From Diadema antillarum (taxonomy: Eukaryota): a stretch of 64,000 nucleotides of DNA. Location: assembly GCF_040938485.1 (NCBI RefSeq), contig NW_027272190.1:558001-622000 (forward strand), written 5' to 3'. The position numbers were made by a program, and so were the translations under genes. A model generated the notes under the pieces. It saw nothing but the letters and a program-made list of their open reading frames with translations. It had not been told where the DNA came from and did no database searches. Positions 12,122-64,000 of the stretch are shown here, one piece after another (positions within the stretch are counted from its first letter, which is position 1; every line of letters begins with the position of its first letter).

Positions 12122-14158
12122 CAGTCAGACCGCAGCACCCGATAATTAATTCGCTCATATCAAATTCAACTCGTATGCAAGCCCCCTCGAGGCTTGCATA
12201 CCTAATGAGCTGCGGAAGGGGATTTTGTCCTTGGGCTTTCGGCAGCAAAAATACACCTTATATTCACAAATTTGGTATCAAATTCAAGGAAAATATGTAA
12301 GCTATCGTCACATGTTACTCAAATTATTGTAAATGAAAAATTTCATAGCGTAATTTGAGCTTGAAAAATAATGAAAAAGTAATTCGTGTAGTAGGCCTAC
12401 ACGTTCAAGACGTCAAAAGAATACCAAATTCACCTTGAGTCTCGATGAAAATGCAGTATTCGGTAGTCCATCTCTTAATCTTTGTATCTATGTAAATATC
12501 TTAACAATTTGTTGCTTAATCCGGTCAGGAACCAGTAAAATATACATCGATGTCAGTGCTGGTCAGCTTGAAAACGTGCAATATCAAGAGTAAGCTCTCT
12601 CATTGGACAGCGCTTGCTTTCAGCGCTTGCATTACGTCATTACGATGATACGGTTTGATCCGTTTCATGCCACTTGCGTGCATAGCGCATGCTTGCATAC
12701 AGGCACGCGTGTAGTTCAAGCCAAGTTCAGGGCTGAATGCAAGCACTGTCCAATGAGAGAGCTCTTTCGCGCCACTTACTGTACACTTTGTGTGGAGCAT
12801 ACTTCCGGCTTAAGAGTGAATTTTACAGACATTTCAAAACGGAAAAATCAGTATAAATCTTGCTTGCGTCTCCTCGACTCAAATATATGATGAGCATCTA
12901 AGTTTCTTCTCTACGAAAAAGCCAAAATCAGAAACAACAGTTTCTTAATCCGGTCAGGAACCAAAAACGAACTTCAGTCGACAAAATCTTCCGTGAAAAG
13001 CAGGTAATATTTACACAAATTCAACTGATAATATCGTCATGATAAAAACCGATAGTATGCGCAAATTTGATATAACAATAAAGATCACAGTCTAGAGAAC
13101 AATTCACCGTGACTTTTAGCCATGATGAATGTATGTACAAGTAGCTACACTGTGAAAACCATAGCCCTGTCACACTCTCGCCAAATCTCGCACGTACGAG
13201 ACAAAGTATGGTAGGTGTTCAACACACCGACCGTGTCTATAGAAACCGACCGCGCTCTAAATTATTATGGCATTGCGCGTACAGAAAGAAAATGTACGCA
13301 TGGGGACTACGCGCAACGGTGTTCGATTCTTCACTGGGCTACGCTACCGAGTGAAATGAGGCGAAAACAAATAAGTATTCCCTTTAAATTCCTGAAATTT
13401 AGCAAAATCGAATAAGATCTATCTTGTAACTACATATAACTCGGCCTACCTTTGCTGACTCATTATAGATGTAGAGTATCCTTCAGTAATAAATTTGACG
13501 ATTTTGACCGCAAAATTGTCATTATGCCGCTTTCTCAAACTCCGCCGCTTGTACGATCGTGCACACACGTTACACGTACACATGACATAATTGTTTTGTC
13601 GCCCGCTACGACCGTACGAGTTGAAGCAGAAACGGGAAATGAATGTGAAAGAACAAACCGACTCATCTAATTCATTCCAATTACGATGAAAAGTTTCCTA
13701 ATGAACATCAATTCAAATTCATCAAACAGTCCTTCAAAAGTGACATCGAAGGATTCAAAATATATTCAAATATTATTGGGGAAAAAATGACGGCTGGAAA
13801 AAAAAAACAGCAGCTTGTCGAAAAAACACATTTTTAGTGCGCTTCATACGTATTGTCAGGGTGGTCGGTTTGAATGTACAGGGCAACTGAGTGCGGAAAA
13901 AACGACACCCCACGCGTTCGAAGCCGCCATCTAGAGCGCGTACCTCAGATCGCATTTTCAGTTCGCGCTTATGAATCCAAAGTATTTTCTCCACACGTGA
14001 GTACAATTTCAGGCAAACTGTAAGATTTTTTACGTTTCCGTTAGGTGGTTGGTGTGATGAACACCCAACCATACCTTTCGAACGCAGAAATCGTCAACAA
14101 GAGTGCTGAATAAATCTTGCCGGATCGGCTCATTTGCATACGTGCTGCGATCTGACTG
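12122..14158. mobile_element. 2.0-kb non-autonomous DNA transposon, 17-bp TIR CAGTCAGA(C/T)CGCAGCAC, 4-bp TSD GATA; superfamily uncertain (possibly Academ-like)
   Basis: TIRs differ at 1 base; GATA flanks both ends; the paralogous site at ~38833-38845 is empty (gcagatacaacg). Confidence 0.85.
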
Positions 14159-16089
14159 GATACAACGATTTTCATGCCATGGTGCGTGATTGAGGTATAG
14201 GATAGATAATCATGATGCTTACTGAGCTTCCTTTAAACTGGCAAATTAACTTTTTGTTCATTCTCGGTGCACATATTCGAACTCGTGTATTTGACTCATC
14301 TGGGAATATACTTGTTATTTCGTCAGAGAATCATTGTTCCATCGAATATTATAAGCAACGAGACAGAATGCTAGGTTCCAAAGGTTATCGAATCATCTTA
14401 TTATCATAATTGCAATTGCGTATCAACGTTTAACCTCTTCAGAAAGTATCTTACATTAATTTCAGAAATGCTCTTACGCTGTAGACGCAATAATGTATAA
14501 TGTCAGAGTAGTCAGTGAATGGAAACAAACCTGTCTAAAAACCTTTTTTATTTTGTTTATTCTTGCAAACACTTTTAACACGTTCTTGTTGAATTCCCAA
14601 ATCGGCATAGTCTTAAAGACCACCCGGTTTGCGTAGGGAATTTGAAACAAACTAAAATTATTATGTGCCATTATCAAGCAAAACAGCAGCATCTTAAGAA
14701 AAAAACAACAACTGTAATTTGTTCCAAACTTTTGTTCATATAATCGTTGCCGGCCTGCAGGAATGCATGAAAATCAATTTAATAATCTTTATAACATCTA
14801 CGTTTTTCGAGTAATTTACATCTTTCCTACAAATAATCGTGAATTTAGAACGGCCGTAAATGCGTAACAAAAAAAAAAAAAAATCATGCTTTTTTAATTA
14901 CATTTACGGAAATTGAAAGGAAAATATAGAATTAAGGAATGAAAAGAAGATAAAGCAACTAACATAAGCAAAAAACAAAACAAAACAAAGACAAAAACAG
15001 GTATAACTAAAATTAACTAATGATACACCTATGAGGCTTCTTGAGTAATTTTCAAAGTAAGTCTAATAGCTATATCTTTTGTTCCCCACATTGATTATGA
15101 TTACATTATGACTTGAACTGTTGTTTTCGAACTAATAATAATGAAATGAAATGAATCAGTGATGTCTTGAGCTTAGAGCAGAATAACTCGTTATAAAGTG
15201 AAATTGTTGTGGTATGATGATTCATGACATATTTATACGCAGAGCCTCCGAAACTGATACCATAGGATTATTCCCACAATTACCGATCAATGGAACAGAC
15301 AGTAATAATTGTCACATATAAAGGTACAATCCATTTTCATAGGAATAATGCGTAATCATGGCAAATTTCGACTTGATACATGGAAACATTAATATTTCTA
15401 CGTGCTTTCTGCAGGATAGCATAAAGCTGGTATATATTAATTTTCATGAATTGTGGAGGCAACCTAACGAGCACAAGATGCTTTCAAGGCTACTGGCTCT
15501 CGTAAAAAAACACTTTCATGTGTTTTTGTGTTTTAGCTTGCCGAATAAATGGCATAATTGACCTCAATCGATTGATCAAATCAATCAATCCATCAATCAA
15601 AAAATCAAATAATACATATCAACAAATAGCATCAGAATCACCTTGCATTTTTTCTCTACCGCCTTAACAAATGTAACATAAACATTGTTGTATCATCACG
15701 AGTGATATTTTGGAATGCATATTCAAATTCTAGTTAAATGAATATACAAGGGGCTCGGTGCAACATTATAGGCACCGTGCTAACCCACAAAATAGTCGTT
15801 TTGAGATAATCGCTGTTGAATGTTTGGAAAGTCCATACATTGTACATTTATAAAACATGAATGCATGCATTTTTTTTCCATTTTATTGGTTGAATTCAAA
15901 TATGATATTTTCACGGAGGTTAGAGTGAAGGGTAAGGATTATGAAAATGCATGTAACTCATTTTTGACAAAAGAGTGGGTTAGCGCTATATTGCACCGAC
16001 CCCCTCAATTGTTAAAAATGATGTTATTTTCATTATCATAAACACACACACACACACAAAAAAAAAACAAAAAACTGGAAGATCATTAA

Positions 16090-16476
16090 AGGGTGTGTAC
16101 AGTTGTGGTCGAGGTGTAGGTTTAGCTTTTAACGTTTTGCGAGATATTCAGAAACCACTCTATGAGATGTCAAAAAGCATGCAGTTCTAGGGGGTATCAA
16201 AAGTTTATTCGATGAAAATCGATTTTGAAATGAATGAAATATCCAAAAACAAGGTGAAACAAAGAGATCCTAATAAAGTCGGGGCATGTCGCCTTTTATT
16301 ATTATCACTTTTTTTTTGGATATCTCAGCCATTTTGATAACCAATTTTCATCAAATAAACGTTGAATCCTTCGTAAAGTTACATAATCTTTCATATTTCA
16401 TAAGAGGCTTTTCATTATCTCACTTAGGAATGTTCAAAACATGAATCCCTACCTCAACCAGTACTGTACAGTCCCT
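16090..16476. mobile_element. TTAA-flanked MITE (Kolobok/T2-like, AGGG..CCCT termini)
   Basis: TTAA at 16086-89 and 16477-80; the paralogous site near 40405 has a single TTAA. Confidence 0.88.
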
Positions 16477-18878
16477 TTAAGTGCCGATTACTTTATTTCC
16501 TGTCCTCCCACAGCTAGGAAAAAAAACCACCCGAGTACGCTTGTAAGAACACACTTAACTGAAAAGACATGCTAAAAAAAAAAAAAATGGAGAGTAATAT
16601 TCTCACTGAATAGCAACGTTCTATACTCACCAGTTGAAAATTATGTTAAGTGACCGGATGCGCATTCTCGGTGTCCGGAATATATCTATACCGGTCTTTC
16701 GTCTCTCCTTTTGGGAAACCTCCTAAGAAACAACAATTAACATATATAAAACGTAAAACAACACAGTTTAACATATATTATGAAAAGGTGGTGCTTGTTA
16801 ATTTTACTGGATATACCAAAGGATTTGTTTTCGTCTTCTTTTGCATAACATTATTTTTATAACACTCAACGTTGACATCTGTGTAGTATTAATGTTTACA
16901 CTTTATAGACGAATAATTGTCTGTGCAAGAGATATAATGTAACACGTTCATTATCTTAGATGTTATAAGGTTCATCACAGATTGATGAAAATGGTAATGG
17001 ATTCTGTTATACGGTTTGACGGTCCTGGGGAAGATTTTTGTTTTCTTTCTGTAATGCTCCTCTCTATAAAGCTGTTAGAATAAATGCATGATTGAGGTTT
17101 GAAGTCAAGTAATATGAAAATCATGTTTGTGCAAGAGATGGCTAATGCAGGTGAACGTACTTTCCAATGGAGGAGTGACGGTACATTATGCGTATAACAG
17201 GCAATGGATAGGCATGATATTTTGGCACTATGATCCTGGGGAGATGTTTCCTGATTTCAAAACGAAGGACTCGAGTTCGAATCCTGACAAGGTTATTGTT
17301 CATATTATTGGACGATTTTTTTCCCCAACCACAGTGCTGTCCCTTTCCACGCATGTGTACAGGGTAAATGGGTATAGGCCCTATCTGGCAGTATGTGCGT
17401 GGTAACTGTAATTACAGGGTGAAAAAAAGCAGTACAGAGAGGCAACCATTTAAGGACGTAAAAAATGCCACAGCTGAGACGATGTTTTCTTTTTTTGGGA
17501 AGGGGGGGGGTGGGGTGTTATGAAAAAAAAGAACTTCATTCACATGGCCAACTACACCTCGGGTGTTGGGGTTATGAATTAGCCATTCAATCACAGCTAT
17601 CACTATTAAAGTATTTTGGAAAACAAACGAGAACGAAGGTACTAATGTTGATCTCACTGAACATAACTACGATCTCTACTTACCGATTCCTTGATAAATT
17701 CTTGGCTGAATATGGGTCTTGGAATTGACTTGTGGTTCACTTCAGCAACCTTCAACAGAATCTTTTCCGCATCTTCGTACTTTTTCTGAGACATGAGCCA
17801 GCGCACAGACTCAGGAATAAAACTGTATAGAATCATTATGTAGATGCATATCATATATCTTATATTTGAAAGGGAGCTCGAAAGCGGTAGTTTTGAAATT
17901 AGCAGGAAATAGGTGATATAATATGCTATTCTGCTGAGACAACATGTAGAGCTTATTAACGTCATAGAAAATAGATACTGTAATCGAAAGGTATAATACA
18001 GACAACAGAAACTGCGTTGAGAGGTATAGTTTTTATTTGTTTTTGTTTGTATTTATCACTAAAGCTGACTGTCTTAAGTTTTAAAAAGATCTAGCTTCAG
18101 TGGACTCGTTAACTCATTTTCATAAAATCGTTAGAAGGATTCACGTCAATATCGAAATCAGGATGTATTTCCGTAAAATTACCATGCATTTTTCTGTCGT
18201 GTCTTAAAAGAGACTAGATGAAAAATGATCAAATGAAAATTAAAACAGACCACTGGTCTAGATATCAAAAATGTATCCATAGAGATGCATACTATATGAC
18301 AGCACTGCTGGCAATTAACAGAGTGGACTATTCCTGAAAACGACAGTCGAATCGCTCACATTGATTATCAGTTTGGATAATCAGATCGTCACACAGTAAA
18401 GAGACCGTGATGAATGAAAAGGAGTGGGTATTTAAGTGGGAACTACAGCAAATTTGATCACAACTCTGCATACTTACAATATTGCTACAATGGATAAGGC
18501 GATTGGAGCTGATGTCACCAGTTGCAGCGTTTTCCAATCACGGAAGAGGAAGGCAATTAGGGCAAGGAACATGTACCCTAGGGCATACGGGATACCAAAG
18601 GCAATTCCAACTATGTTCCGCTTCAGAGGGCCAACGAACTCAGTTGCTGTAAGAGGGTAAAGAATGGAGGAAGAATATCATTTTAATACCATCACGTAAT
18701 TATGAAAAATCAAAGTATTTGAAAAAAGCAATATGAAAAATGACGTAGGAATTATAAAATGATAAAAATACAGACGGTCCAGATCATGGATGACTTACTA
18801 TCATATAAATATCAGCGGTAGCCCGGGGCTACCTGAATTTTCAACATGGCTCTAGTGTATATACATACATATATATGT

Positions 18879-19574
18879 ATGTTACCGTGCACCACAAAAA
18901 AAAAAAAAAGGTCGCACACAGTGATCTTGTGTGAGGACTGAAAACAGGTGAAATGGGTCAACCTAACCAATCTTGATTTTTTTTCATATTTTTTTGAAAG
19001 AGCAAGTCCTTTTCTGTATTATATTAAAGTTTGGGATCATAAAACAAACAGGAACTTGTGTTTTCAGCAGTTTTTCTCGAACACTTTTTGGTGGAATAGT
19101 GTGATTAGTTGTTTGTCATAGAACCCTCTTCCGGTTTCTCAAAAAAACCCTGTCCAATCACTTCACTTTCAACTCCAATAACATTAGAGAGAATAAAGCT
19201 ACTGCATTGAAAGTTGGTATTAATCATGTACAGAATGTGCTGATGACATATGCTTAATTTCAGTTTAATCTAATACATTGTAATCCCTTATTTGTTGTTG
19301 CTCCGGTGGTCAACATCCTGTTTTTTTGTTCAATTCATCCCACAGTTAGCATAGCTTGGTAAAAATTAAGCGCTTGAATACACCCTGTACTTCAGAGCCT
19401 GTTTTCTCAGTTCACACTTTCCAGAGTGTGTCCTTTCTTTCCAATATCAAGATAGGTTAAGAGAGTCCTTTTGAATCAAGTTATACATCATTTTAAAGCT
19501 TAGAGTCTGCTCTTTCAGATTGTACTCTTAACTCAAAACCATGATTGGCGACTTGTTTGTTTTCTGATGCAAGG

Positions 19575-19579
<5 letters not shown>
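18879..19579. mobile_element. ~700-bp MITE, TGTGACCGTGCACCACAAAA TIR family
   Basis: TIR at both ends; high similarity to 23060-23749, 47046-47650 and 63517-64000; absent from the paralogous intron. Confidence 0.85.
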
Positions 19580-19610
<31 letters not shown>

Positions 19611-20144
19611 GTATATACTAGTATATATATAGATTGGTTTTTTTTGGGGGGGGGGGCGATCGGGCACTTCTAGAATTTCGGGCAACTGCATTGCGTTTTC
19701 GATCCACCAAATTTCAGATTTAAGTATTTCAGTGATCCGAATGGGCCATCGGAGGAAGGCATCAATGGCGATCCATGATATCATATTTTCATAAGAAGTG
19801 CATAATTATGCTCATAAATGACGAATAAGTAAAACATTTGAGAGATCGTGATCGTTATATCAATCATGTCTGACATACAAATCTTGCCCTTATTGTACTT
19901 GCCATAATCATTAACGAATGTATTAGATGTCCTTGAATATGAACGTCTATTCATATTAGGAAAAATGAGGGTGTTGTTTTTTTTTTTCTTGCACCTTTGT
20001 TTGTTTGTTTGTTAGTTAGTTTTTTTTATTACCTAAGACGTAAGCAATGATGTAGGAACCGATTGCTGCCACACCCTGGAAGAATCGTAGCACGGAATAA
20101 ACTACCCAAGACGGAGAGATGGTAGTGAGAGCACCGAAGGCTAG

Positions 20145-20356
20145 TTGCACCGAAGGTTCTTTAATTCGAAAATGAAATAAGGTTCGTTATTTAGAAGGTT
20201 CGTTAATCCAAAAATGAAACAAACTCGTTATTCCTAAGGTTCGTTACGGACCCTGTATCATTTTGGATAAACGAGCCTTCGGAATAGCGAACCCTATTTC
20301 ATTTTCGGACTAACGAACCTTCGGACTAACGAACCTTCGGAATAACGAACAACACC
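20145..20356. mobile_element. Partial MITE with repeated GGTTCGTTA / TAACGAACC motifs, replacing the 5' part of SLC22 copy A exon 4
   Basis: Several inverted motif copies; absent from copy B, which has the exon start and acceptor at this position. Confidence 0.75.
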
Positions 20357-21759
20357 CAAATAATTTGTTTTCTAATTTCTCTGTCTCTGTCTGTCTGTCT
20401 AAATATCTTTAATCAGATTAATAGATTGTAAGTTTCTATGCATACGTACAATCATGAATATAAACATATCGATTACACAAAATCTTTATGTTTATGAATT
20501 ATATATAAGAAAAAAAAACCTTAAAACCTATCTGTTTAAGATAATATTTATGTTTATGGAACTAAACCTTATTAATGCAGTTATGCATGTCGGATGTATT
20601 GCAAAGTCTGTCCTTTTATGTACGTAAAAGAAATAGTTATTTTAGAATAATGCATTGTGTTTGGTAAATTGCAATTCTTGTTGTTATATTTATATTATGA
20701 TACAATTTGTAAAGCGCATTGAATTTGTTTTCAAGTCTAAAATGCTCTATATAAGAATTTGCTATTATTATTATTGATATTCTTATCAATGTCAACGTTA
20801 TCAATATCATTTAAAACATATGTGCATTGAAGCTTGTCTATCGAGATATGTATAACGGGGAATACGGTCTCTGTACACAGGTGTCTGTTTTAAAGTTAAA
20901 AAGTATAAGAAGGTGGAGTTGAACAAAATTCATGGGAAGAAAGAATGCCTTGATATACATTTACTTACAAGTCAGCGAGCAATCCGAGTATGAATGATCC
21001 GGCCAAACAGCCGCCATAGAAAACTGATTGAGTTACGTCGGGTAAGTCTTCCTTCCCGCATACCAGGTTAAACTGACAGGAGAAAGAAACGCCATACTTT
21101 ACAAAAAGAGTTAAACACATATCATTCGATTAATGAAGTTTATTGTAGTTAACTGAATCATTTAGTTAAGCTGAATAACTTACCCCACTCGATCGTTGTG
21201 TTTAGGAAAATTCTTGTAAAGGTTACCTTTTTAGTGTGTATATTGTGTTCTTATATGTGACCCTGCACCACACACAAACAAAAACCCCAACAAACAAACA
21301 AACAAAAAATCGCCAGATATGGATTTATAGTTTCATAGGACAGATTCTGAAAGAGAAAACTCTAAGCTTTCAATTAATGATGTATAACTCAATTCAGATG
21401 GACTCCCCTAACCTGTCTAAATACTGGAAAGAAAGCACACACTCTGGAAAAATGTGAACCGAGAAAAGAGGTTCTGCAGTACAGAGCCTATTCAAGCGCT
21501 TATTTTTTACCAAGCCGTGCTAGATGTGCGATGAAAGGGACAAAACGAAGGATGTAAACCACCTGAGCAACGACAATGAAGGGATTATCAGATTAAACTA
21601 AAATTGAGCATGTTTCATTAACACATTCTGTCCATCATTAATGCCAATTTTCAAAGCAGTACCATTATCCTTTAAAAGTGATTAAACTTGAGATTGAGCA
21701 GAGTGCTACCGATTTCAAGAAATGAAAATGGACCTCTACAACATACCTGATCATTCTAC

Positions 21760-21975
21760 TCTCCTCAAAAAGGGTTGTGGAAAAACTGCTGAAAACACAC
21801 TTTGTCATTTATGTTATGATCCCAAATTAAAGCATAATGTAGAAGAAGGATATTTCTTTTAGAAAATATGAGAAAAAACCAATATTGACTCAATTGACCC
21901 ATTTCACCTTTTTTTGACCTCTCACGTAAAATCAAGGGGTGCGACTTTTTATTTGTTTTGTGATGCACGGTCACA
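21760..21975. mobile_element. Old inverted partial copy of the TGTGACC MITE (paralog at ~45160-45296)
   Basis: Ends ttttgtgatgcacggtcaca; present at the same position in both duplicates; left coordinate approximate. Confidence 0.7.
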
Positions 21976-23059
21976 TTATCACTGAACTGGAACTGCAAAC
22001 ATCCTCAACGATTAAGACACTATAGAATTTTAAAGGATTATAAATATTGAAATCAAACAGAACTAATAATCAGTAATCATGAAATTACAACAGCATCTTT
22101 TAAAACTTGATCTTGATTACAAATTCAGTAGTTATGCTACCATAAAAGAAATGTGAAATTAGGGTGAGAGAGGAAAAATAAGAAAAAAAAATAAAGATGG
22201 ACTGAGACCAATAATTGGGCCACACTTTTTTATCATTTACAGTGCATTTCCTTAGAGAGTTTTTTCTTTGTTTCCTCTTTTGTCTGTTTGTATGAGAAGA
22301 GACAAGTAGATGCATCAAAACGACTCTTATCTACTGTCCTTGGTCAATTGAAAAAAAAAATTAAACGAATAAATCTTAAAGTATCTCTCATCAGAGAAAT
22401 GAGTTTATATAATTTCTACCTTTCTCCCTCCCCCCCCCCAAAAAAAAGGGGGGGGGGGGCAAAAAAACCAACCTCACTAGCAATGGAGGACTTGTATAAT
22501 GATGTATCATAGATCCATCCTTCGTCGCATGAGATGACGTCACCCAGTCCAGTGCTGTAGTTTGATGGAGAGAGTCCGGGCCAAAAATCGACCCCTGACG
22601 TGTTGTACTTGCGGCATTGCATGTACACAAGGTCGCCGTCAGAAGTTACGTTGAACGGGATGCTGGCGTTGCGCTTTGCCTCTTCTTCTTCTTCTTCTTC
22701 TGATTAAGTCTGCCTCCTTCAATAGACTGAAGATTCTTGCAGACTCTCCACAGAGCTCACCGGAGAGGTCAACTTCACTGCAGTCATAATCATCCCAGTC
22801 TGGTACCTTTATAGATTATTAGCGAAATAGTGCATACAGTCAAGCAAACAATCTATTTTGAAGTGTATTGTGCAGAACATTTTTTTTTTAATTTTCAGGA
22901 CGAACGCAGATGTCAAATAAAAAAAGAAAAGAAAAACACGAGGAAACATAGCCATTTGATTTTTATTTTTTTTTTGATTGTGTGAAAACCTCCCAATCTT
23001 TGTTTTTCTTACAAATTTATCGTTAAAAGAAGAAAAAAATAACAGTTTTGTACAATAAA

Positions 23060-23749
23060 TGTGACCGTGCACCACAAAACGAACAAAAAGTCGGACACAC
23101 TGATTTTTTGTGAGGTTTGAAAATAGGTGAAATGGGTCAACCGAGCTGATGTTGACTTTTTCATATTTTCTGAAAGGCAAGTCTTCTACATTATGCTAAC
23201 ATTTGGGATCATAAAACAGGCAGGAAAGTGTGGTGTTTAGCCGTTTTTCTTGAGCACTATTTGGCAGAATAGTGTGATTAAGTGTGTCTTTAGAGTCCCT
23301 TTTTCGTTTCTTGAAAACCTTGTACACCCTCTTCTCTTTCAAGTCCTATAACTTTTGAAAGGATAGGGCTACTGCTTTGAAAGTTGGCATTACTTAAGGA
23401 CAGAATGTGTTAATAAGGCATGATAAATTTGAATTTAATCTGATAATCCCTTCATTGTTGTTACTCCAGTAGTTTACATCCTGTTTTTGTCCCATTCATT
23501 GCACACCTAGCACGGCGTGGTAAAGATTAAGCGCTTGAGTAGACACTGTACTTCAGAGCCTCTTTTCTCAGTTCACACCTTTCCTGAGTGTGTGCCTTCT
23601 GTCCAATATTTAGATAGGTTAGGAGAGTCCATTTGATTTGAGTTATACATCATTTTAAAGCTAAAAGTCGACTTTTTTAGAATATGCTCTTAAGTAAAAT
23701 AAGTTTCATGTCTGGCGACTTATTTTTTGTTTTGTGGTGCAGGGTCACA
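23060..23749. mobile_element. 690-bp MITE, TGTGACCGTGCACCACAAAA TIR family
   Basis: tgtgaccgtgcaccacaaaa ... ttttgtggtgcagggtcaca; the paralogous site near 46560-46570 is empty. Confidence 0.88.
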
Positions 23750-23871
23750 AATAGTCTTTTAAGCAGATGCTAGCAATTCCATTGCCAAATTTACCAACGT
23801 TGTTGAAGGTTGTATCTAAGGTGGGACCCAATTTTCAATATGTCGCGGCGGAAATTATGTATTACAATTAA

Positions 23872-24852
23872 TCCTAAAAAGCCCAAAGGGGGGGGGGGGG
23901 GGGCACATTGCGCACTCCAACCAGATTTTCATTCGCCATTCCTTCGTCCTTAATCCAATTTTAACCAAATTGATGACTTTTCCTAAAATCTTATTCCAAA
24001 CATTTTGATATATAATTTAGCTATATGTGATGATGCTGGTTGCCATGGCAACCATAAACTGACAACCGTGTCAGTCAGATTTTTCGTATTTTTCTGTTCC
24101 AATTCCAATTAACAATAATTTAATGTATGAAATGGGCGTTTCTTGGCTGAAATTTGCTGACGAAGCAAAATGTGAAGATATTATTGCCCTGAAATATTTT
24201 TGCTATTATTTCCTTTGTTTTTCTGTGACAATGGCATAAAACAATAGATATAAAAGAGATACTTGAAAATAATTGAATTTTCCAAAGATTGCTGTTCTAT
24301 TTTGTGCCATTTTGATTCCCTCACCCAAGTTATACCTCTAATGTCATTTTTTATCACATTATCAATCTGCAAACTTAAAATTTCAGTTTTATGGGAATAT
24401 GAAATATGCTATAAAGTATGCATGAACCTATCCCTAACAATACATCACAGGTCTCATAATGTATTTCTTTATCCGTTATGAATATCGCCCCCCATGTGGT
24501 GACCTTCAAAAAATTTCAACCATAGCAAATAGTGAGCTTTGACTTGCACATCATTTGTGGCAAATATGAAAAATATTGGTCTATGATAACATATATATAC
24601 TGGGGATAAAGAAATTATACAGAAAAATCATGTTTTTAGCATATGTCGTATGTTTTTCCCTCTATGGGTGACCTTGAAAACATTAAAGTATGCAGTCATG
24701 TAGAATATGAATTGCTCTACCCATGTGCCAAATATGACGACGAAACATCAAACAGTAACAAAGTTATATCGGGGGGCACAATGTGCCCACAAGGTGCCCC
24801 CCCCCCCCCTCCTGAGCCTGGGAAGGGCCAAAAAAGCTTGGGCTTTATAGGG
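23872..24852. mobile_element. ~1-kb piggyBac-like MITE (TTAA-(T/C)CCTAAAAAGCCC .. GGGCTTTATAGGG-TTTA)
   Basis: Imperfect TIR, near-TTAA flanks, absent from the copy B intron. Confidence 0.6.
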
Positions 24853-25563
24853 TTTAGAATGTGGCTCCTCGTCTTTCTTTTTTCTGATTTGTTTGCGCTG
24901 CTCTATTTGAAACAGCAGTGGAATTATTTTCACACTTTTATTCTTCAAAGTGTTAAGAATATTGATGGAATGACTGCGAAATTATAGGGAGATCTTCAAG
25001 TATACAATGGGTAAGAACATTAAACAGATAATATAATAGTTTCAGTTGTATTTCAAGTAAAAAGTTGATTCCAGCTTTTATGATAGTACCGCTTTGTTAA
25101 AATCAAGTAGACTTTGTATGGTTTTTTATATTTTCTACGTGCTTTATTTGGTGAATACCGCGCATAAAATTGTTGAGATATTCACAAACAAAGTAGTCTC
25201 AATTAGATGTGGCTCCCATCTTTTAATAGGACCACTAATAACTGTTTTTTAAACTATATTTAAGGCATTTCAAAATCGATTTTCATGAAATAAACTTCAA
25301 ATTCCTTTGAAAACTGTATGCTTTATCATATTTCATATAAAGTAACTTCTAATCATCTCCCCCCCAAAAGATAATAATAGATATATGAATAAAAGAATAA
25401 GCCCAATTTCAGCCTTAATTGCATCATGCCTGTAATCTTAACCGGGATATTAAAAAAAAATAAAAACTATGTCAATTAATGCCTTTGAGAGTGTGTGTAA
25501 AATGCCTCATAGTTTTACGCAAAAAGAGATAAGCTTTCTCATATCAATTTTCATAGCCATTTG

Positions 25564-25725
25564 NNNNNNNNNNNNNNNNNNNNNNNNNNNNNNNNNNNNN
25601 NNNNNNNNNNNNNNNNNNNNNNNNNNNNNNNNNNNNNNNNNNNNNNNNNNNNNNNNNNNNNNNNNNNNNNNNNNNNNNNNNNNNNNNNNNNNNNNNNNNN
25701 NNNNNNNNNNNNNNNNNNNNNNNNN
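25564..25725. other. Assembly gap (162 N) in SLC22 copy A intron 1
   Basis: Run of N. Confidence 1.
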
Positions 25726-25989
25726 CAATTCAATTTCCCCAAAACAACAGCAAAACACTCTCTTACAAAAACTATCAAAAGAATTCATCATACATATTTC
25801 GAAGCCGTTAAAGTTTGACTATTTGACTATGAAAAATAAACATTGGGACTCTTAAGCAATTACTTGACAAAAACGCGAACTTTGATGTTTGTTCTATTTC
25901 AGGGCAACGTCTTTATACTTGATGTGGACTCAATAGGGCACCTGTAAAACGTTCAAGCATTAACCTTTTATCAACTAGTGTTATTACTT

Positions 25990-26026
<37 letters not shown>

Positions 26027-27776
26027 GGACCGAGGGAATACCTGGTTTCAGCCACGACTGTCAAACATCACACAGATTTAAATTTTTCTTTGTACCCTCA
26101 CCCCCGCAGGATAAATCATGCATTGTTATAATTTTTTCTTCACTTCATAATAACGAAAAGTGAAGTTCTGTCTGAATAAAGCGATTAAAAAGATACGAAA
26201 AGGCAAAAACAATTTCACGTCAAATGAGAAAATATCCAATCTATGCAGCAACGCCTACAGAAAACTCAGGTATACTAGTCTTCTAAAATTATCTAATTAC
26301 ATATCACCGTGCGTATGACGTTATAAAACATGCTGAAACGTGGGCACGTGTGTAAATATGACCCTGAGTTTTATTGAATGTGATAACCTCCGCTTCAATA
26401 AAGATAATGACGAGCGATGTACAGGTACACAGAGTTCAAAAAGTATAGTTCAATGATTTTATTTTCTGTTCCTCAGCCAGCTGTGCTTGGGATTGTTCTC
26501 TGAAAATGCCCAAATTACACTCAATGAATAATTTATGCAATGTATTTTGTAAAACTGGGAATAAATGTTAAGATATTGCACACAGAATGCTGAAAAAAGG
26601 GGGCATCTTTGATTTAAAGTAGAATATTGCCTGCATTTATTCTAGGTATGATATCATACGTGACTGTTATCTTCATAATTGTTATATCACAACAATTCTA
26701 GGTCAACATATACATTTGCCTTCGTTTGAACCAAACAATCAATGAACGCCAATGTTATTCTGATGAAATTAATATTCCGTCATCAATCAAAAAGAAGGCT
26801 GTAAAATTCGTTATTGCCCGGACATGGAATAAAATGATATAACAATAGTAATATAGAGAATTTTACAAAATATTATGTAGCATTTGTGGGTATACCTTCT
26901 GAGTATCTTGAGGATAATATCTTACCCTCCCCATCTCTCCCTTTACCAGAAGGAATTACTTTGAGTATACTCTTTCGTTATGCCATCTGAGAAAATTGGA
27001 ATACCATGCTCCATTAACTAAGTTTATTTATCATTCGTTTAATTCTCTATTTTTCATTGACTTCGGATTACACTGTTACCTGACTTGTAAGAAAGTTTTA
27101 GAGAGTTTTTAATAAAAAGGCAGTAGCATAACTTTTCTGCACCCACACATACACAGACACACATACATTCACTAAAGCATAGAAATCACATACTTTGCAT
27201 GCATGCATTGTTAGATTCTCATCCAACTTTGACTGCATTCTCGTATTATCATAGGTCCTATTTTACGCCCGGGTTATACTTCCCCTCAATATGGCGTTGT
27301 CGTAATGGTGGCACGGAAGAAAGATGAGAAGGTGACGTTCACCTTTTCAACGATTTTTTTTAAAACAAATTTTAATTCCTGTATTTCAAGCTTCCATATT
27401 TGATATCACTCGACCTACCGCACACCAGTGATCCATCGAGACGTTTAGAAACACTGATATCACGAACGACCAAGAGTTCAAGAAACTGACGGTGCAGACG
27501 AGAGTGAATACGCGCCATTGGTAGGGCCCCATTTCTCCGATCTCCTTCAAGATGTCGTCGAAGCTCTTCATTGTGATACCACTGATTCCTTCCTTTTCAA
27601 AAAGAATGCTAAAATCACGTTGATTTTCGAAGTCGAACTATCGTTCTTACCACAAAAGTGCAATAGCCTCGGCAGATTGTGACGGCACTTTTACTAACAA
27701 TGGTTATGATGGAACCACCGCAATGCAGTAGTCTTTGAACGTTCTAGGTATATTGCCGTCACGTCACGAAGGGAAG

Positions 27777-63516: not shown

Positions 63517-64000
63517 TGTGACCGTGCTCCTCAAAACGAGCATAAAGTCGCACACACTGATTTTGCGTGAGTACTGAAAATAAGTGAAATGGGTCAACCC
63601 AGCCGAACTTGACTTTTCCATATTTTCTGAAAGAGCGGGTCTTCTTTTACATTATGCTATAATTTGGTATCATAAAACGGCAGGAAAGAGCGTTTTATTT
63701 GACACTTTATCTCGAACATTTTTGGTAGAATAGTGTGATTAGGTGTGTCTTTAGAATCCCTTTTTCATTTCTGAAAAATTTTGTCCACACTCTTCACTTT
63801 CAACTCTAATAACTTTTGACAGGATAGGGCTACTGCTTTGAAAGTTGGCATTAATTATGGACAGAATGTTTTAATGAGGCATAGTCAATTTCAGTTTAAT
63901 CTGATAATCCCTTCACTGTTGTTACTCTGGTGGTTTACTTCCTGTTTTTTGTCCTATTCATCGCACAGCCAGCACGGTTTGGTAAAGATTAAGCGCTTGA
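63517..64000. mobile_element. MITE, TGTGACC family, runs off the window; interrupts a LINE remnant
   Basis: Left TIR and internal sequence match 23060-23749. Confidence 0.85.

What the first reader, a model, noticed from the sequence alone, without database searches (positions are those of the whole stretch)
22680..22760. Frameshifting insertion in an exon paired with a cryptic GT-AG intron that would restore the frame (candidate intron gain)
Seen: copy A exon 2 carries 64 extra nt relative to copy B. On the minus strand these form a hairpin (AGTCTGC..TTCAGT-CT-ATTGAA..GCAGACT) with a (GAA)n tail, flanked by GGAGAG/GAAGAG. Unspliced, the frame stops at 22641-22639. Copy A alone reads CCG|GTGAGC 11 nt upstream of the insert (copy B has ACCGATGACG, no GT), and the insert contains CTTAATCAG just before the GAA tail. 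Splicing out 22760-22700 (61 nt) gives ..DLS-EEEEEEE-AKRNASIP.., back in frame, with the repeat tail exonised as poly-Glu. Inference: a tiny retroelement-like 3' end supplied the acceptor, the host exon supplied the donor, and a new intron was born. Against: the intron is short, its polypyrimidine tract is weak, one loop Cys is lost, and the gene has two other lesions.
Basis: partly seen in the sequence, partly recalled or inferred. Interest (0 to 1): 0.78.

Follow-up and report, generated by a model that had tools for sequence, protein, structure and literature searches.

The report
LINE tail inserted in a pseudogene exon
The extra 64 bases in this transporter gene copy are the very end of a common jumping gene (a LINE) that landed in an exon of a duplicate gene that is broken elsewhere too, so the neat GT-AG "new intron" is most likely a coincidence, not a gene rescue.

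Summary
Copy A exon 2 (22806..22473, minus strand) carries a net 64 nt more than copy B. The frame stops at 22641-22639. Removing 22760..22700 (61 nt, GT..AG) restores the frame.

The retroelement guess is right. The insert (22745..22680) matches base for base the last 45 nt plus the (GAA)6GAG tail of a very abundant, young non-LTR retrotransposon. That element encodes a reverse transcriptase, and its copies are cut short at different 5' points.

The "intron was born" reading is not supported:
- All three A-type copies in the assembly share a +1 frameshift in exon 8.
- The window's copy has also lost the start of exon 4.
- The GAA tail offers an AG every 3 nt, so 45 different GT..AG pairs restore the frame.
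- The proposed acceptor has a pyrimidine fraction of 0.33, against 0.56-0.89 for real acceptors of this gene.
- The splice would delete a cysteine that is invariant in homologues.
- Neutral drift makes an in-phase GTRAG in 3-6% of simulations.

Verdict: an ordinary 5'-truncated LINE insertion in a decaying tandem duplicate. Low interest.

The parts
10422..27568 (-). Copy A of a tandemly duplicated SLC22/OCT-like transporter gene (at least 10 exons found). It is a pseudogene.
   Evidence: tblastn of homologues P0006, P0014 and P0020; self-alignment of the window; exon-by-exon alignment to copy B.
37029..50316 (-). Copy B, the paralogue. All exons examined are open.
22473..22806 (-). Copy A exon 2 (334 nt = 270 + 64). 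It encodes the large extracellular loop.
22680..22745 (-). Extremely 5'-truncated LINE copy in sense orientation. It has 45 nt of 3' UTR hairpin (22745..22701), (GAA)6 (22700..22683) and GAG (22682..22680).
   Evidence: 100% identity to the 3' end of many genomic copies; fold; RVT_1 in the parent element.
22700..22760 (-). Candidate 61-nt GT..AG interval: donor CCG|GTGAGC at 22760, acceptor AATCAG| at 22700. Its use is not shown.
   Evidence: No RNA data.
22639..22641 (-). Premature TGA reached when exon 2 is read unspliced.
12029..12031 (-). Exon 8 lesion: AAA where copy B has AA (+1 frameshift, with a stop 43 codons later).
   Evidence: (present in window A and in both A-type copies on contig C710).
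20149..20150 (-). Junction of a 215-nt deletion specific to the window's haplotype. It removes the exon 4 acceptor and about the first 43 nt of exon 4.
   Evidence: The C710 A-type copies keep this stretch.
20134..20340 (.). MITE-like palindromic repeat in intron 3 of copy A, next to the deletion.
   Evidence: Inverted self-match; alignments.
46016..46285 (-). Copy B exon 2 (90 codons, open, no insert). Used as the reference state.

Best explanation
A non-LTR retrotransposon (LINE) inserted by target-primed reverse transcription into exon 2 of copy A, one of two tandem SLC22-like transporter genes. Reverse transcription stopped, or the cDNA was joined, right after the 3' hairpin. Only the last 45 nt and the (GAA)6GAG tail were therefore left behind, a net +64 nt that shifts the frame.

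Copy A is an unprocessed pseudogene. It also carries a +1 frameshift in exon 8 in all copies, and in this haplotype a 215-nt deletion that takes away the start of exon 4.

The GT at 22760 and the AG at 22700 are a fortuitous cryptic pair. The tail gives an AG in the same phase every 3 nt, so any in-phase upstream GT restores the frame. If the pair is ever used, it does not rescue a working protein.

Shown: the origin of the insert, the lesions and the splice-site comparison. Inferred: the insertion mechanism and the lack of function.
For: Origin of the insert:
- 999 first-look candidates, with many copies 100% identical to the insert.
- Full copies continue upstream where copy A has host exon sequence.
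- 5' ends vary between copies.
- The parent element has a 462-aa open frame with RVT_1 at 1.5e-37. Its nearest solved structures are LINE-1 ORF2p and R2.

Lesions in copy A:
- The exon 8 +1 is in window A and in both A-type copies on contig C710. Translation is broken, while B is open.
- The exon 4 deletion is in the window haplotype only.

Against a real intron:
- 45 frame-restoring GT..AG pairs exist, including one that uses the conserved GT at 22778.
- The acceptor's pyrimidine fraction is 0.33, against 0.56-0.89 for nine real acceptors.
- The deleted cysteine is invariant in 8 homologues.
- Drift alone gives an in-phase GTRAG in 3-6% of simulations.
Against: - The donor CCG|GTGAGC is as good as the gene's real donors. 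Both of its key bases are derived in copy A, which drift alone does in only 3-6% of runs.
- GAA repeats just downstream of a weak acceptor are classical exonic splicing enhancers (established knowledge, not tested here). The AG at 22700 could therefore be used more than its pyrimidine tract suggests.
- Counts of synonymous and non-synonymous changes do not show copy A to be significantly more relaxed than B (13/23 against 11/15).
- No transcript data of any kind were obtained.
Confidence: 0.82

Rival explanations
1. Cryptic splicing without function. Copy A is transcribed, and the strong new donor is sometimes joined to the AG in front of the GAA tail, which acts as a splicing enhancer. Part of the transcripts then lose the 61 nt. 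The mRNA is still broken by the exon 8 frameshift (and by exon 4 here), so it would be a nascent or accidental intron in a dead gene.
For: The donor GTGAG is of real-donor quality. The arithmetic is right. GAA repeats are known splicing enhancers (established knowledge).
Against: - Pyrimidine fraction of 0.33 at the acceptor.
- The only yUnAy match near the acceptor lies 4 nt from the AG (read from the sequence).
- 61 nt is far below this gene's own introns (about 0.6-5.6 kb) and the 1,753-bp mean reported for a sea urchin (PMC3460201).
- No run held copy-A-specific words.
Confidence: 0.13
2. True adaptive intron gain. The LINE tail supplied the acceptor and the host exon evolved a donor under selection. 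Splicing rescues a working transporter with a poly-Glu stretch in its loop, and the other lesions are recent or limited to some alleles.
For: - Two derived substitutions create GTGAG exactly in phase.
- The insert and donor are kept in three copies.
- Exons 8-10 are nearly identical to B.
Against: - The exon 8 +1 is shared by all three A-type copies.
- An invariant loop cysteine would be lost.
- The acceptor is weak.
- Many alternative in-frame pairs exist.
- The insert shows no difference from the LINE consensus, so it is probably younger than much of copy A's own divergence (inference).
Confidence: 0.04
3. The extra 64 nt are an assembly artefact or filler DNA from double-strand-break repair, not a retrotransposition.
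For: The target-site duplication is ambiguous, and 2-3 nt of the B-type sequence (TCT) are unaccounted for at the junction.
Against: The same insert with the same flanks is present in three independently assembled copies on two contigs. It ends precisely with the element's own 3' terminus and tail, as expected for target-primed reverse transcription.
Confidence: 0.01

Closest known systems
5'-truncated insertions of 'stringent' LINEs, whose 3' end is a stem-loop followed by a short tandem-repeat tail (L2/CR1-type elements such as eel UnaL2; recalled from my own knowledge, not tested against those sequences)
   Same: A hairpin directly followed by a short repeat tail at the element's 3' end, a reverse transcriptase in the parent, variable 5' truncation among copies, and hundreds or more near-identical copies.
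   Different: The clade was not determined and no endonuclease domain was examined. This copy is extreme: only 66 nt, just the hairpin and tail.
Introners and other transposon-derived intron gain (Gozashti et al. 2022, PMC9860276)
   Same: The idea is the same: the element carries one splice site, and the other is recruited from the duplicated target or from neighbouring exon sequence. Small in-frame additions to the protein are described there too.
   Different: - Introners are families whose many copies sit in genes as working introns, and those examples come from DNA transposons.
- Here there is one locus, a retroelement tail, a weak acceptor, no transcript evidence and a host gene that is otherwise broken.
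Removal of exonic transposon insertions by cryptic splicing (Tc1 in C. elegans, Ds/dSpm in maize; recalled from my own knowledge)
   Same: A transposon in an exon could be removed from the pre-mRNA through splice sites in and near the element, giving a near-normal reading frame.
   Different: Those cases were shown by cDNA analysis and give partial gene function. Here nothing is shown at the RNA level, and the frame is broken again downstream.
SLC22 (organic cation/anion transporter) family of the major facilitator superfamily
   Same: - Homologues of 534-596 aa align along at least 10 exons.
- The large extracellular loop has invariant cysteines.
- Single exons give weak Sugar_tr and MFS_1 matches.
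   Different: The single-exon Pfam matches lie below the curated cut-offs. A joined protein model was not built or searched.

Membership tests
Non-LTR retrotransposon (LINE) insertion | Sequence identical to the 3' terminus of a multi-copy element, ending in its simple-repeat tail | tested here: met
   66 nt are 100% identical to many copies, which share the (GAA)6-7 tail.
Non-LTR retrotransposon (LINE) insertion | Parent element encodes a reverse transcriptase of the non-LTR type | tested here: met
   RVT_1 at 1.5e-37; the best solved relatives are LINE-1 ORF2p and R2.
Non-LTR retrotransposon (LINE) insertion | Variable 5' truncation among copies | tested here: met
   copies of 165, 250, 285 and 325 nt; other copies extend into the reverse transcriptase frame.
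Non-LTR retrotransposon (LINE) insertion | Target-site duplication flanking the insert | tested here: inconclusive
   GAG/GGAG at both ends cannot be told apart from the tail, and 2-3 nt of the B-type sequence are missing.
Non-LTR retrotransposon (LINE) insertion | Endonuclease domain in the parent element, and assignment to a clade | not tested
   Only the 3' 1.8 kb of one copy was read. That copy has no long frame upstream.
Spliceosomal (U2-type GT-AG) intron | GT...AG boundaries whose removal keeps the frame open | tested here: met
   However, 44 other pairs in the exon do the same.
Spliceosomal (U2-type GT-AG) intron | Polypyrimidine tract before the acceptor | tested here: not met
   pyrimidine fraction 0.33 at -20..-3, against 0.56-0.89 in nine real acceptors of copy B.
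Spliceosomal (U2-type GT-AG) intron | Branch site at a workable distance from the acceptor | tested here: inconclusive
   Read. TTAAT lies 4 nt from the AG. The near-match TTCAG lies 28 nt from the AG but only 32 nt from the donor. No scoring model for this species was at hand.
Spliceosomal (U2-type GT-AG) intron | Removal seen in transcripts | not testable with these tools
   - no run holds copy-A-specific words.
- no short protein fragments found.
Introner-type transposon-derived intron | Many copies of the same element serving as introns in different genes | not tested
   No gene annotation or RNA data for this genome were available. The copies inspected were not examined for a genic context.
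Unprocessed pseudogene of a tandem duplicate | Keeps the exon-intron structure but has frame-breaking lesions that the paralogue lacks | tested here: met
SLC22 / MFS transporter | Full-length similarity to family members, including the cysteine-rich loop after TM1 | tested here: met
   The per-exon Pfam matches are below the cut-offs.

The most novel reading that the evidence does not exclude
A nascent intron caught just after birth in an animal. A 66-nt LINE tail supplied an AG with a built-in GAA splicing enhancer, the host exon acquired a consensus GTGAG donor 15 nt upstream, and the 61-nt interval is spliced from copy A transcripts. This would show a retroelement route to intron creation that resembles Introners but works from a LINE 3' end.
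Probability: 0.1. Interest if true: 0.55.

Novelty: already known. Interest (0 to 1): 0.2.

Why it matters
As it stands this is an ordinary event: a truncated LINE copy landed in an exon of a redundant gene duplicate that is decaying.

It is a useful caution. A (GAA)n tail creates an AG in one phase every three bases, so frame-restoring cryptic introns around such inserts are expected by chance.

If RNA data showed that the 61 nt are removed, the locus would be a rare, datable animal example of an intron made from a retroelement tail plus a mutated host donor. The host gene would still be non-functional.

Tried and rejected
RNA evidence:
- The look-up of sequencing runs on exon 2 of copy A returned only runs holding 2 of 29 words, probably the repeat part. 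None is on record as RNA.
- My local script did align the whole window, that stretch included, to loci already fetched from the same genome.

Protein fragments: a word search with the post-insert part of exon 2 found nothing. That search sees only proteins of 41-131 aa, so it says little.

Rfam on the parent repeat gave nothing meaningful.

The hairpin's stability is not significant against shuffles.

Lineage-specific synonymous and non-synonymous counts have no power (Fisher p = 0.79).

A full-length parent element was not recovered: the copy I extended has no long frame upstream.

The literature gave no minimum intron length for sea urchins, only a mean of 1,753 bp.

Full report
**What is there**

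The window holds a tandem duplication with a period of about 24.5 kb: 5.5-28 kb matches 30.3-50.7 kb. Each unit carries a minus-strand gene. Its exons align to 534-596-aa SLC22/OCT-like transporters found with copy B exon 2. Single exons give weak Sugar_tr and MFS_1 matches.

Copy B exon 2 is 46285..46016 and has 90 open codons. Copy A exon 2 is 22806..22473, which is 334 nt or 64 nt more. Read through, copy A stops at TGA 22641-22639.

**What the insert is**

A search of the window's own 1.75-Gb genome with the insert gave 999 first-look candidates. All 40 scored hits were 99-100% identical. In those copies the same 45 nt (AGTCTGC...AATCA) and a (GAA)6-7 tail form the 3' end of a longer repeat. 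That repeat continues upstream (...TAAATAGCACC) where copy A has host exon sequence.

The copies have different 5' ends: 165, 250, 285 and 325 nt. Others run on into a 462-aa open frame with a reverse-transcriptase domain (RVT_1, 1.5e-37). Its nearest solved relatives are LINE-1 ORF2p and R2 proteins.

The insert is therefore an extremely 5'-truncated copy (22745..22680, 66 nt) of a young, abundant non-LTR retrotransposon. It lies in sense orientation and consists of just the terminal hairpin and the repeat tail. The hairpin folds at -14.2 kcal/mol, which is not remarkable against shuffles. The target-site duplication is ambiguous, and 2-3 nt of the B-type sequence are missing at the junction.

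**The state of copy A**

The genome holds a second version of the locus on contig C710. It is 99.4-99.9% identical and arranged B-A-A, so it is an alternative haplotype or a very recent duplication. Both of its A-type copies carry the identical insert and donor.

- All three A-type copies share a 1-nt insertion at the third codon of exon 8 (AAA at 12029-12031; B has AA). It breaks the frame, with a stop after 43 codons. B is open there.
- The window's copy A also lacks 215 nt at 20149|20150. That removes the acceptor and about the first 43 nt of exon 4, beside a MITE-like palindrome. The C710 copies keep this stretch.

Copy A is thus an unprocessed pseudogene. Even perfect removal of the 61 nt would not give a full-length protein in any copy seen.

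**Is the GT-AG pair more than chance?**

- The (GAA)n tail puts an AG in the same phase every three bases. Exon 2 of copy A contains 45 GT..AG pairs of 30 nt or more that restore the frame without a stop. Seven of them use the conserved GT at 22778, which B and C also have. The frame arithmetic alone therefore carries no weight.
- The donor is the interesting part. A has CCG|GTGAGC, B has CCGATGACG and a third paralogue 100 kb away has CCGCTGACA, so the GT and the +5 G are derived in A. The site lies in the most variable stretch of the loop. There all 6 polarisable A/B differences in the 66 nt upstream of the aligner's gap (22806..22741) fall on the A lineage.
- A simulation of neutral drift from the inferred ancestor produced an in-phase GTRAG in 3.4-5.8% of runs. 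That is low, but it is not compelling for a feature picked after the fact.
- The acceptor is poor: its pyrimidine fraction at -20..-3 is 0.33, against 0.56-0.89 for nine real acceptors of copy B.
- The only clean branch-site match lies 4 nt from the AG (read).
- The gene's own introns are about 0.6-5.6 kb. The mean intron in the sea urchin S. purpuratus is 1,753 bp (PMC3460201).
- The splice would delete Cys19 of exon 2, which is invariant in B, C and six homologues.
- In favour of some use: the donor matches real donors of this gene, and GAA repeats are known splicing enhancers (established knowledge, not tested here).

**Transcript evidence**

None could be obtained.
- No public run held copy-A-specific words. 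The 0.07 share is 2 of 29 words, probably from the repeat. The listed runs belong to a coded organism and to echinoderm metagenomes.
I sent none of those letters to any database search afterwards. A local script did align the whole window to loci already fetched from the same genome.
- A word search for short protein fragments found nothing. Its length limits make that blank uninformative.
- The joined, spliced protein model was translated only locally and was not searched or folded. The N run 25564-25725 was not touched.

**Selection**

With paralogue C as outgroup, exons 1, 2, 3 and 5 show 13 synonymous and 23 non-synonymous changes on the A lineage, against 11 and 15 on B. The difference is not significant. 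In exon 2 alone, A has 5 and 13 and B has 7 and 5. The insert shows no difference from the LINE consensus, so it is probably younger than much of copy A's own divergence (inference).

**Comparison with what is known**

It also matches the classical splicing-out of exonic transposons (Tc1, Ds; recalled from my own knowledge). This locus fails or cannot be tested on the features that define a working intron: pyrimidine tract, branch site and RNA evidence. It is a single insertion, not a family of intron-forming copies.

What is firmly established is ordinary: a 5'-truncated LINE insertion in an exon of a decaying tandem duplicate.

**Verdict**

- Observation: confirmed.
- Retroelement origin: confirmed and made precise.
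- Intron birth: unsupported and functionally moot.
- Probability that the 61 nt are spliced at some detectable level: about 0.1-0.15.
- Probability that this rescues a working gene: about 0.04.
- Interest: low (0.2).

Noticed in passing
G000:C710:418500-497499 (loci L050-L059) against window 10249-51336: A second, 99.4-99.9% identical version of the locus on another contig has three gene units (B-A-A) where the window has two (B-A). This is copy-number variation between haplotypes, a very recent duplication, or an assembly collapse.
   Followed up: partly
window 10422-12038 against 37029-38757: Exons 8-10 of copies A and B are 98-100% identical (exon 9 has no difference), while exons 1-2 differ by 12-16%. 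The nearby intron sequence is also very similar apart from indels. This suggests recent gene conversion of the 3' part, and the exon 8 +1 in A would then be younger than that.
   Followed up: partly
window 22430-22470 and 45965-46010 (minus strand, just after the exon 2 donor): Intron 2 of both A and B starts with an odd homopolymer block, about C12 T8 G10 (CCCC..TTTT..GGGG). It could fold back on itself. It is absent from paralogue C.
   Followed up: no
window 20134-20340: A MITE-like palindromic repeat built of CGAAGGTTCGTTA-type units lies in intron 3 of copy A. The 215-nt deletion that removed the exon 4 start in this haplotype begins inside it.
   Followed up: partly
window 18879-19583, 21296-21977, 23057-23753, 44690-45296, 47043-47642, 63513-64000: A dispersed repeat of about 700 nt occurs six or more times in both orientations in the introns and flanks of both gene copies. 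It flanks exon 2 of copy A as an inverted pair.
   Followed up: no
G000:C1302:464888-481321 (loci L061, L053, L060): A third paralogue of the transporter (copy C, plus strand, about 81% identical in exon 2) lies about 100 kb from the window. Exons 1-5 are open. It was used as the outgroup.
   Followed up: partly
L020:302-1690 and L008:1241-1565: The parent LINE has an open 462-aa reverse-transcriptase frame and hundreds of copies at about 100% identity, so the family looks recently or currently active in this genome. No clade was assigned.
   Followed up: partly
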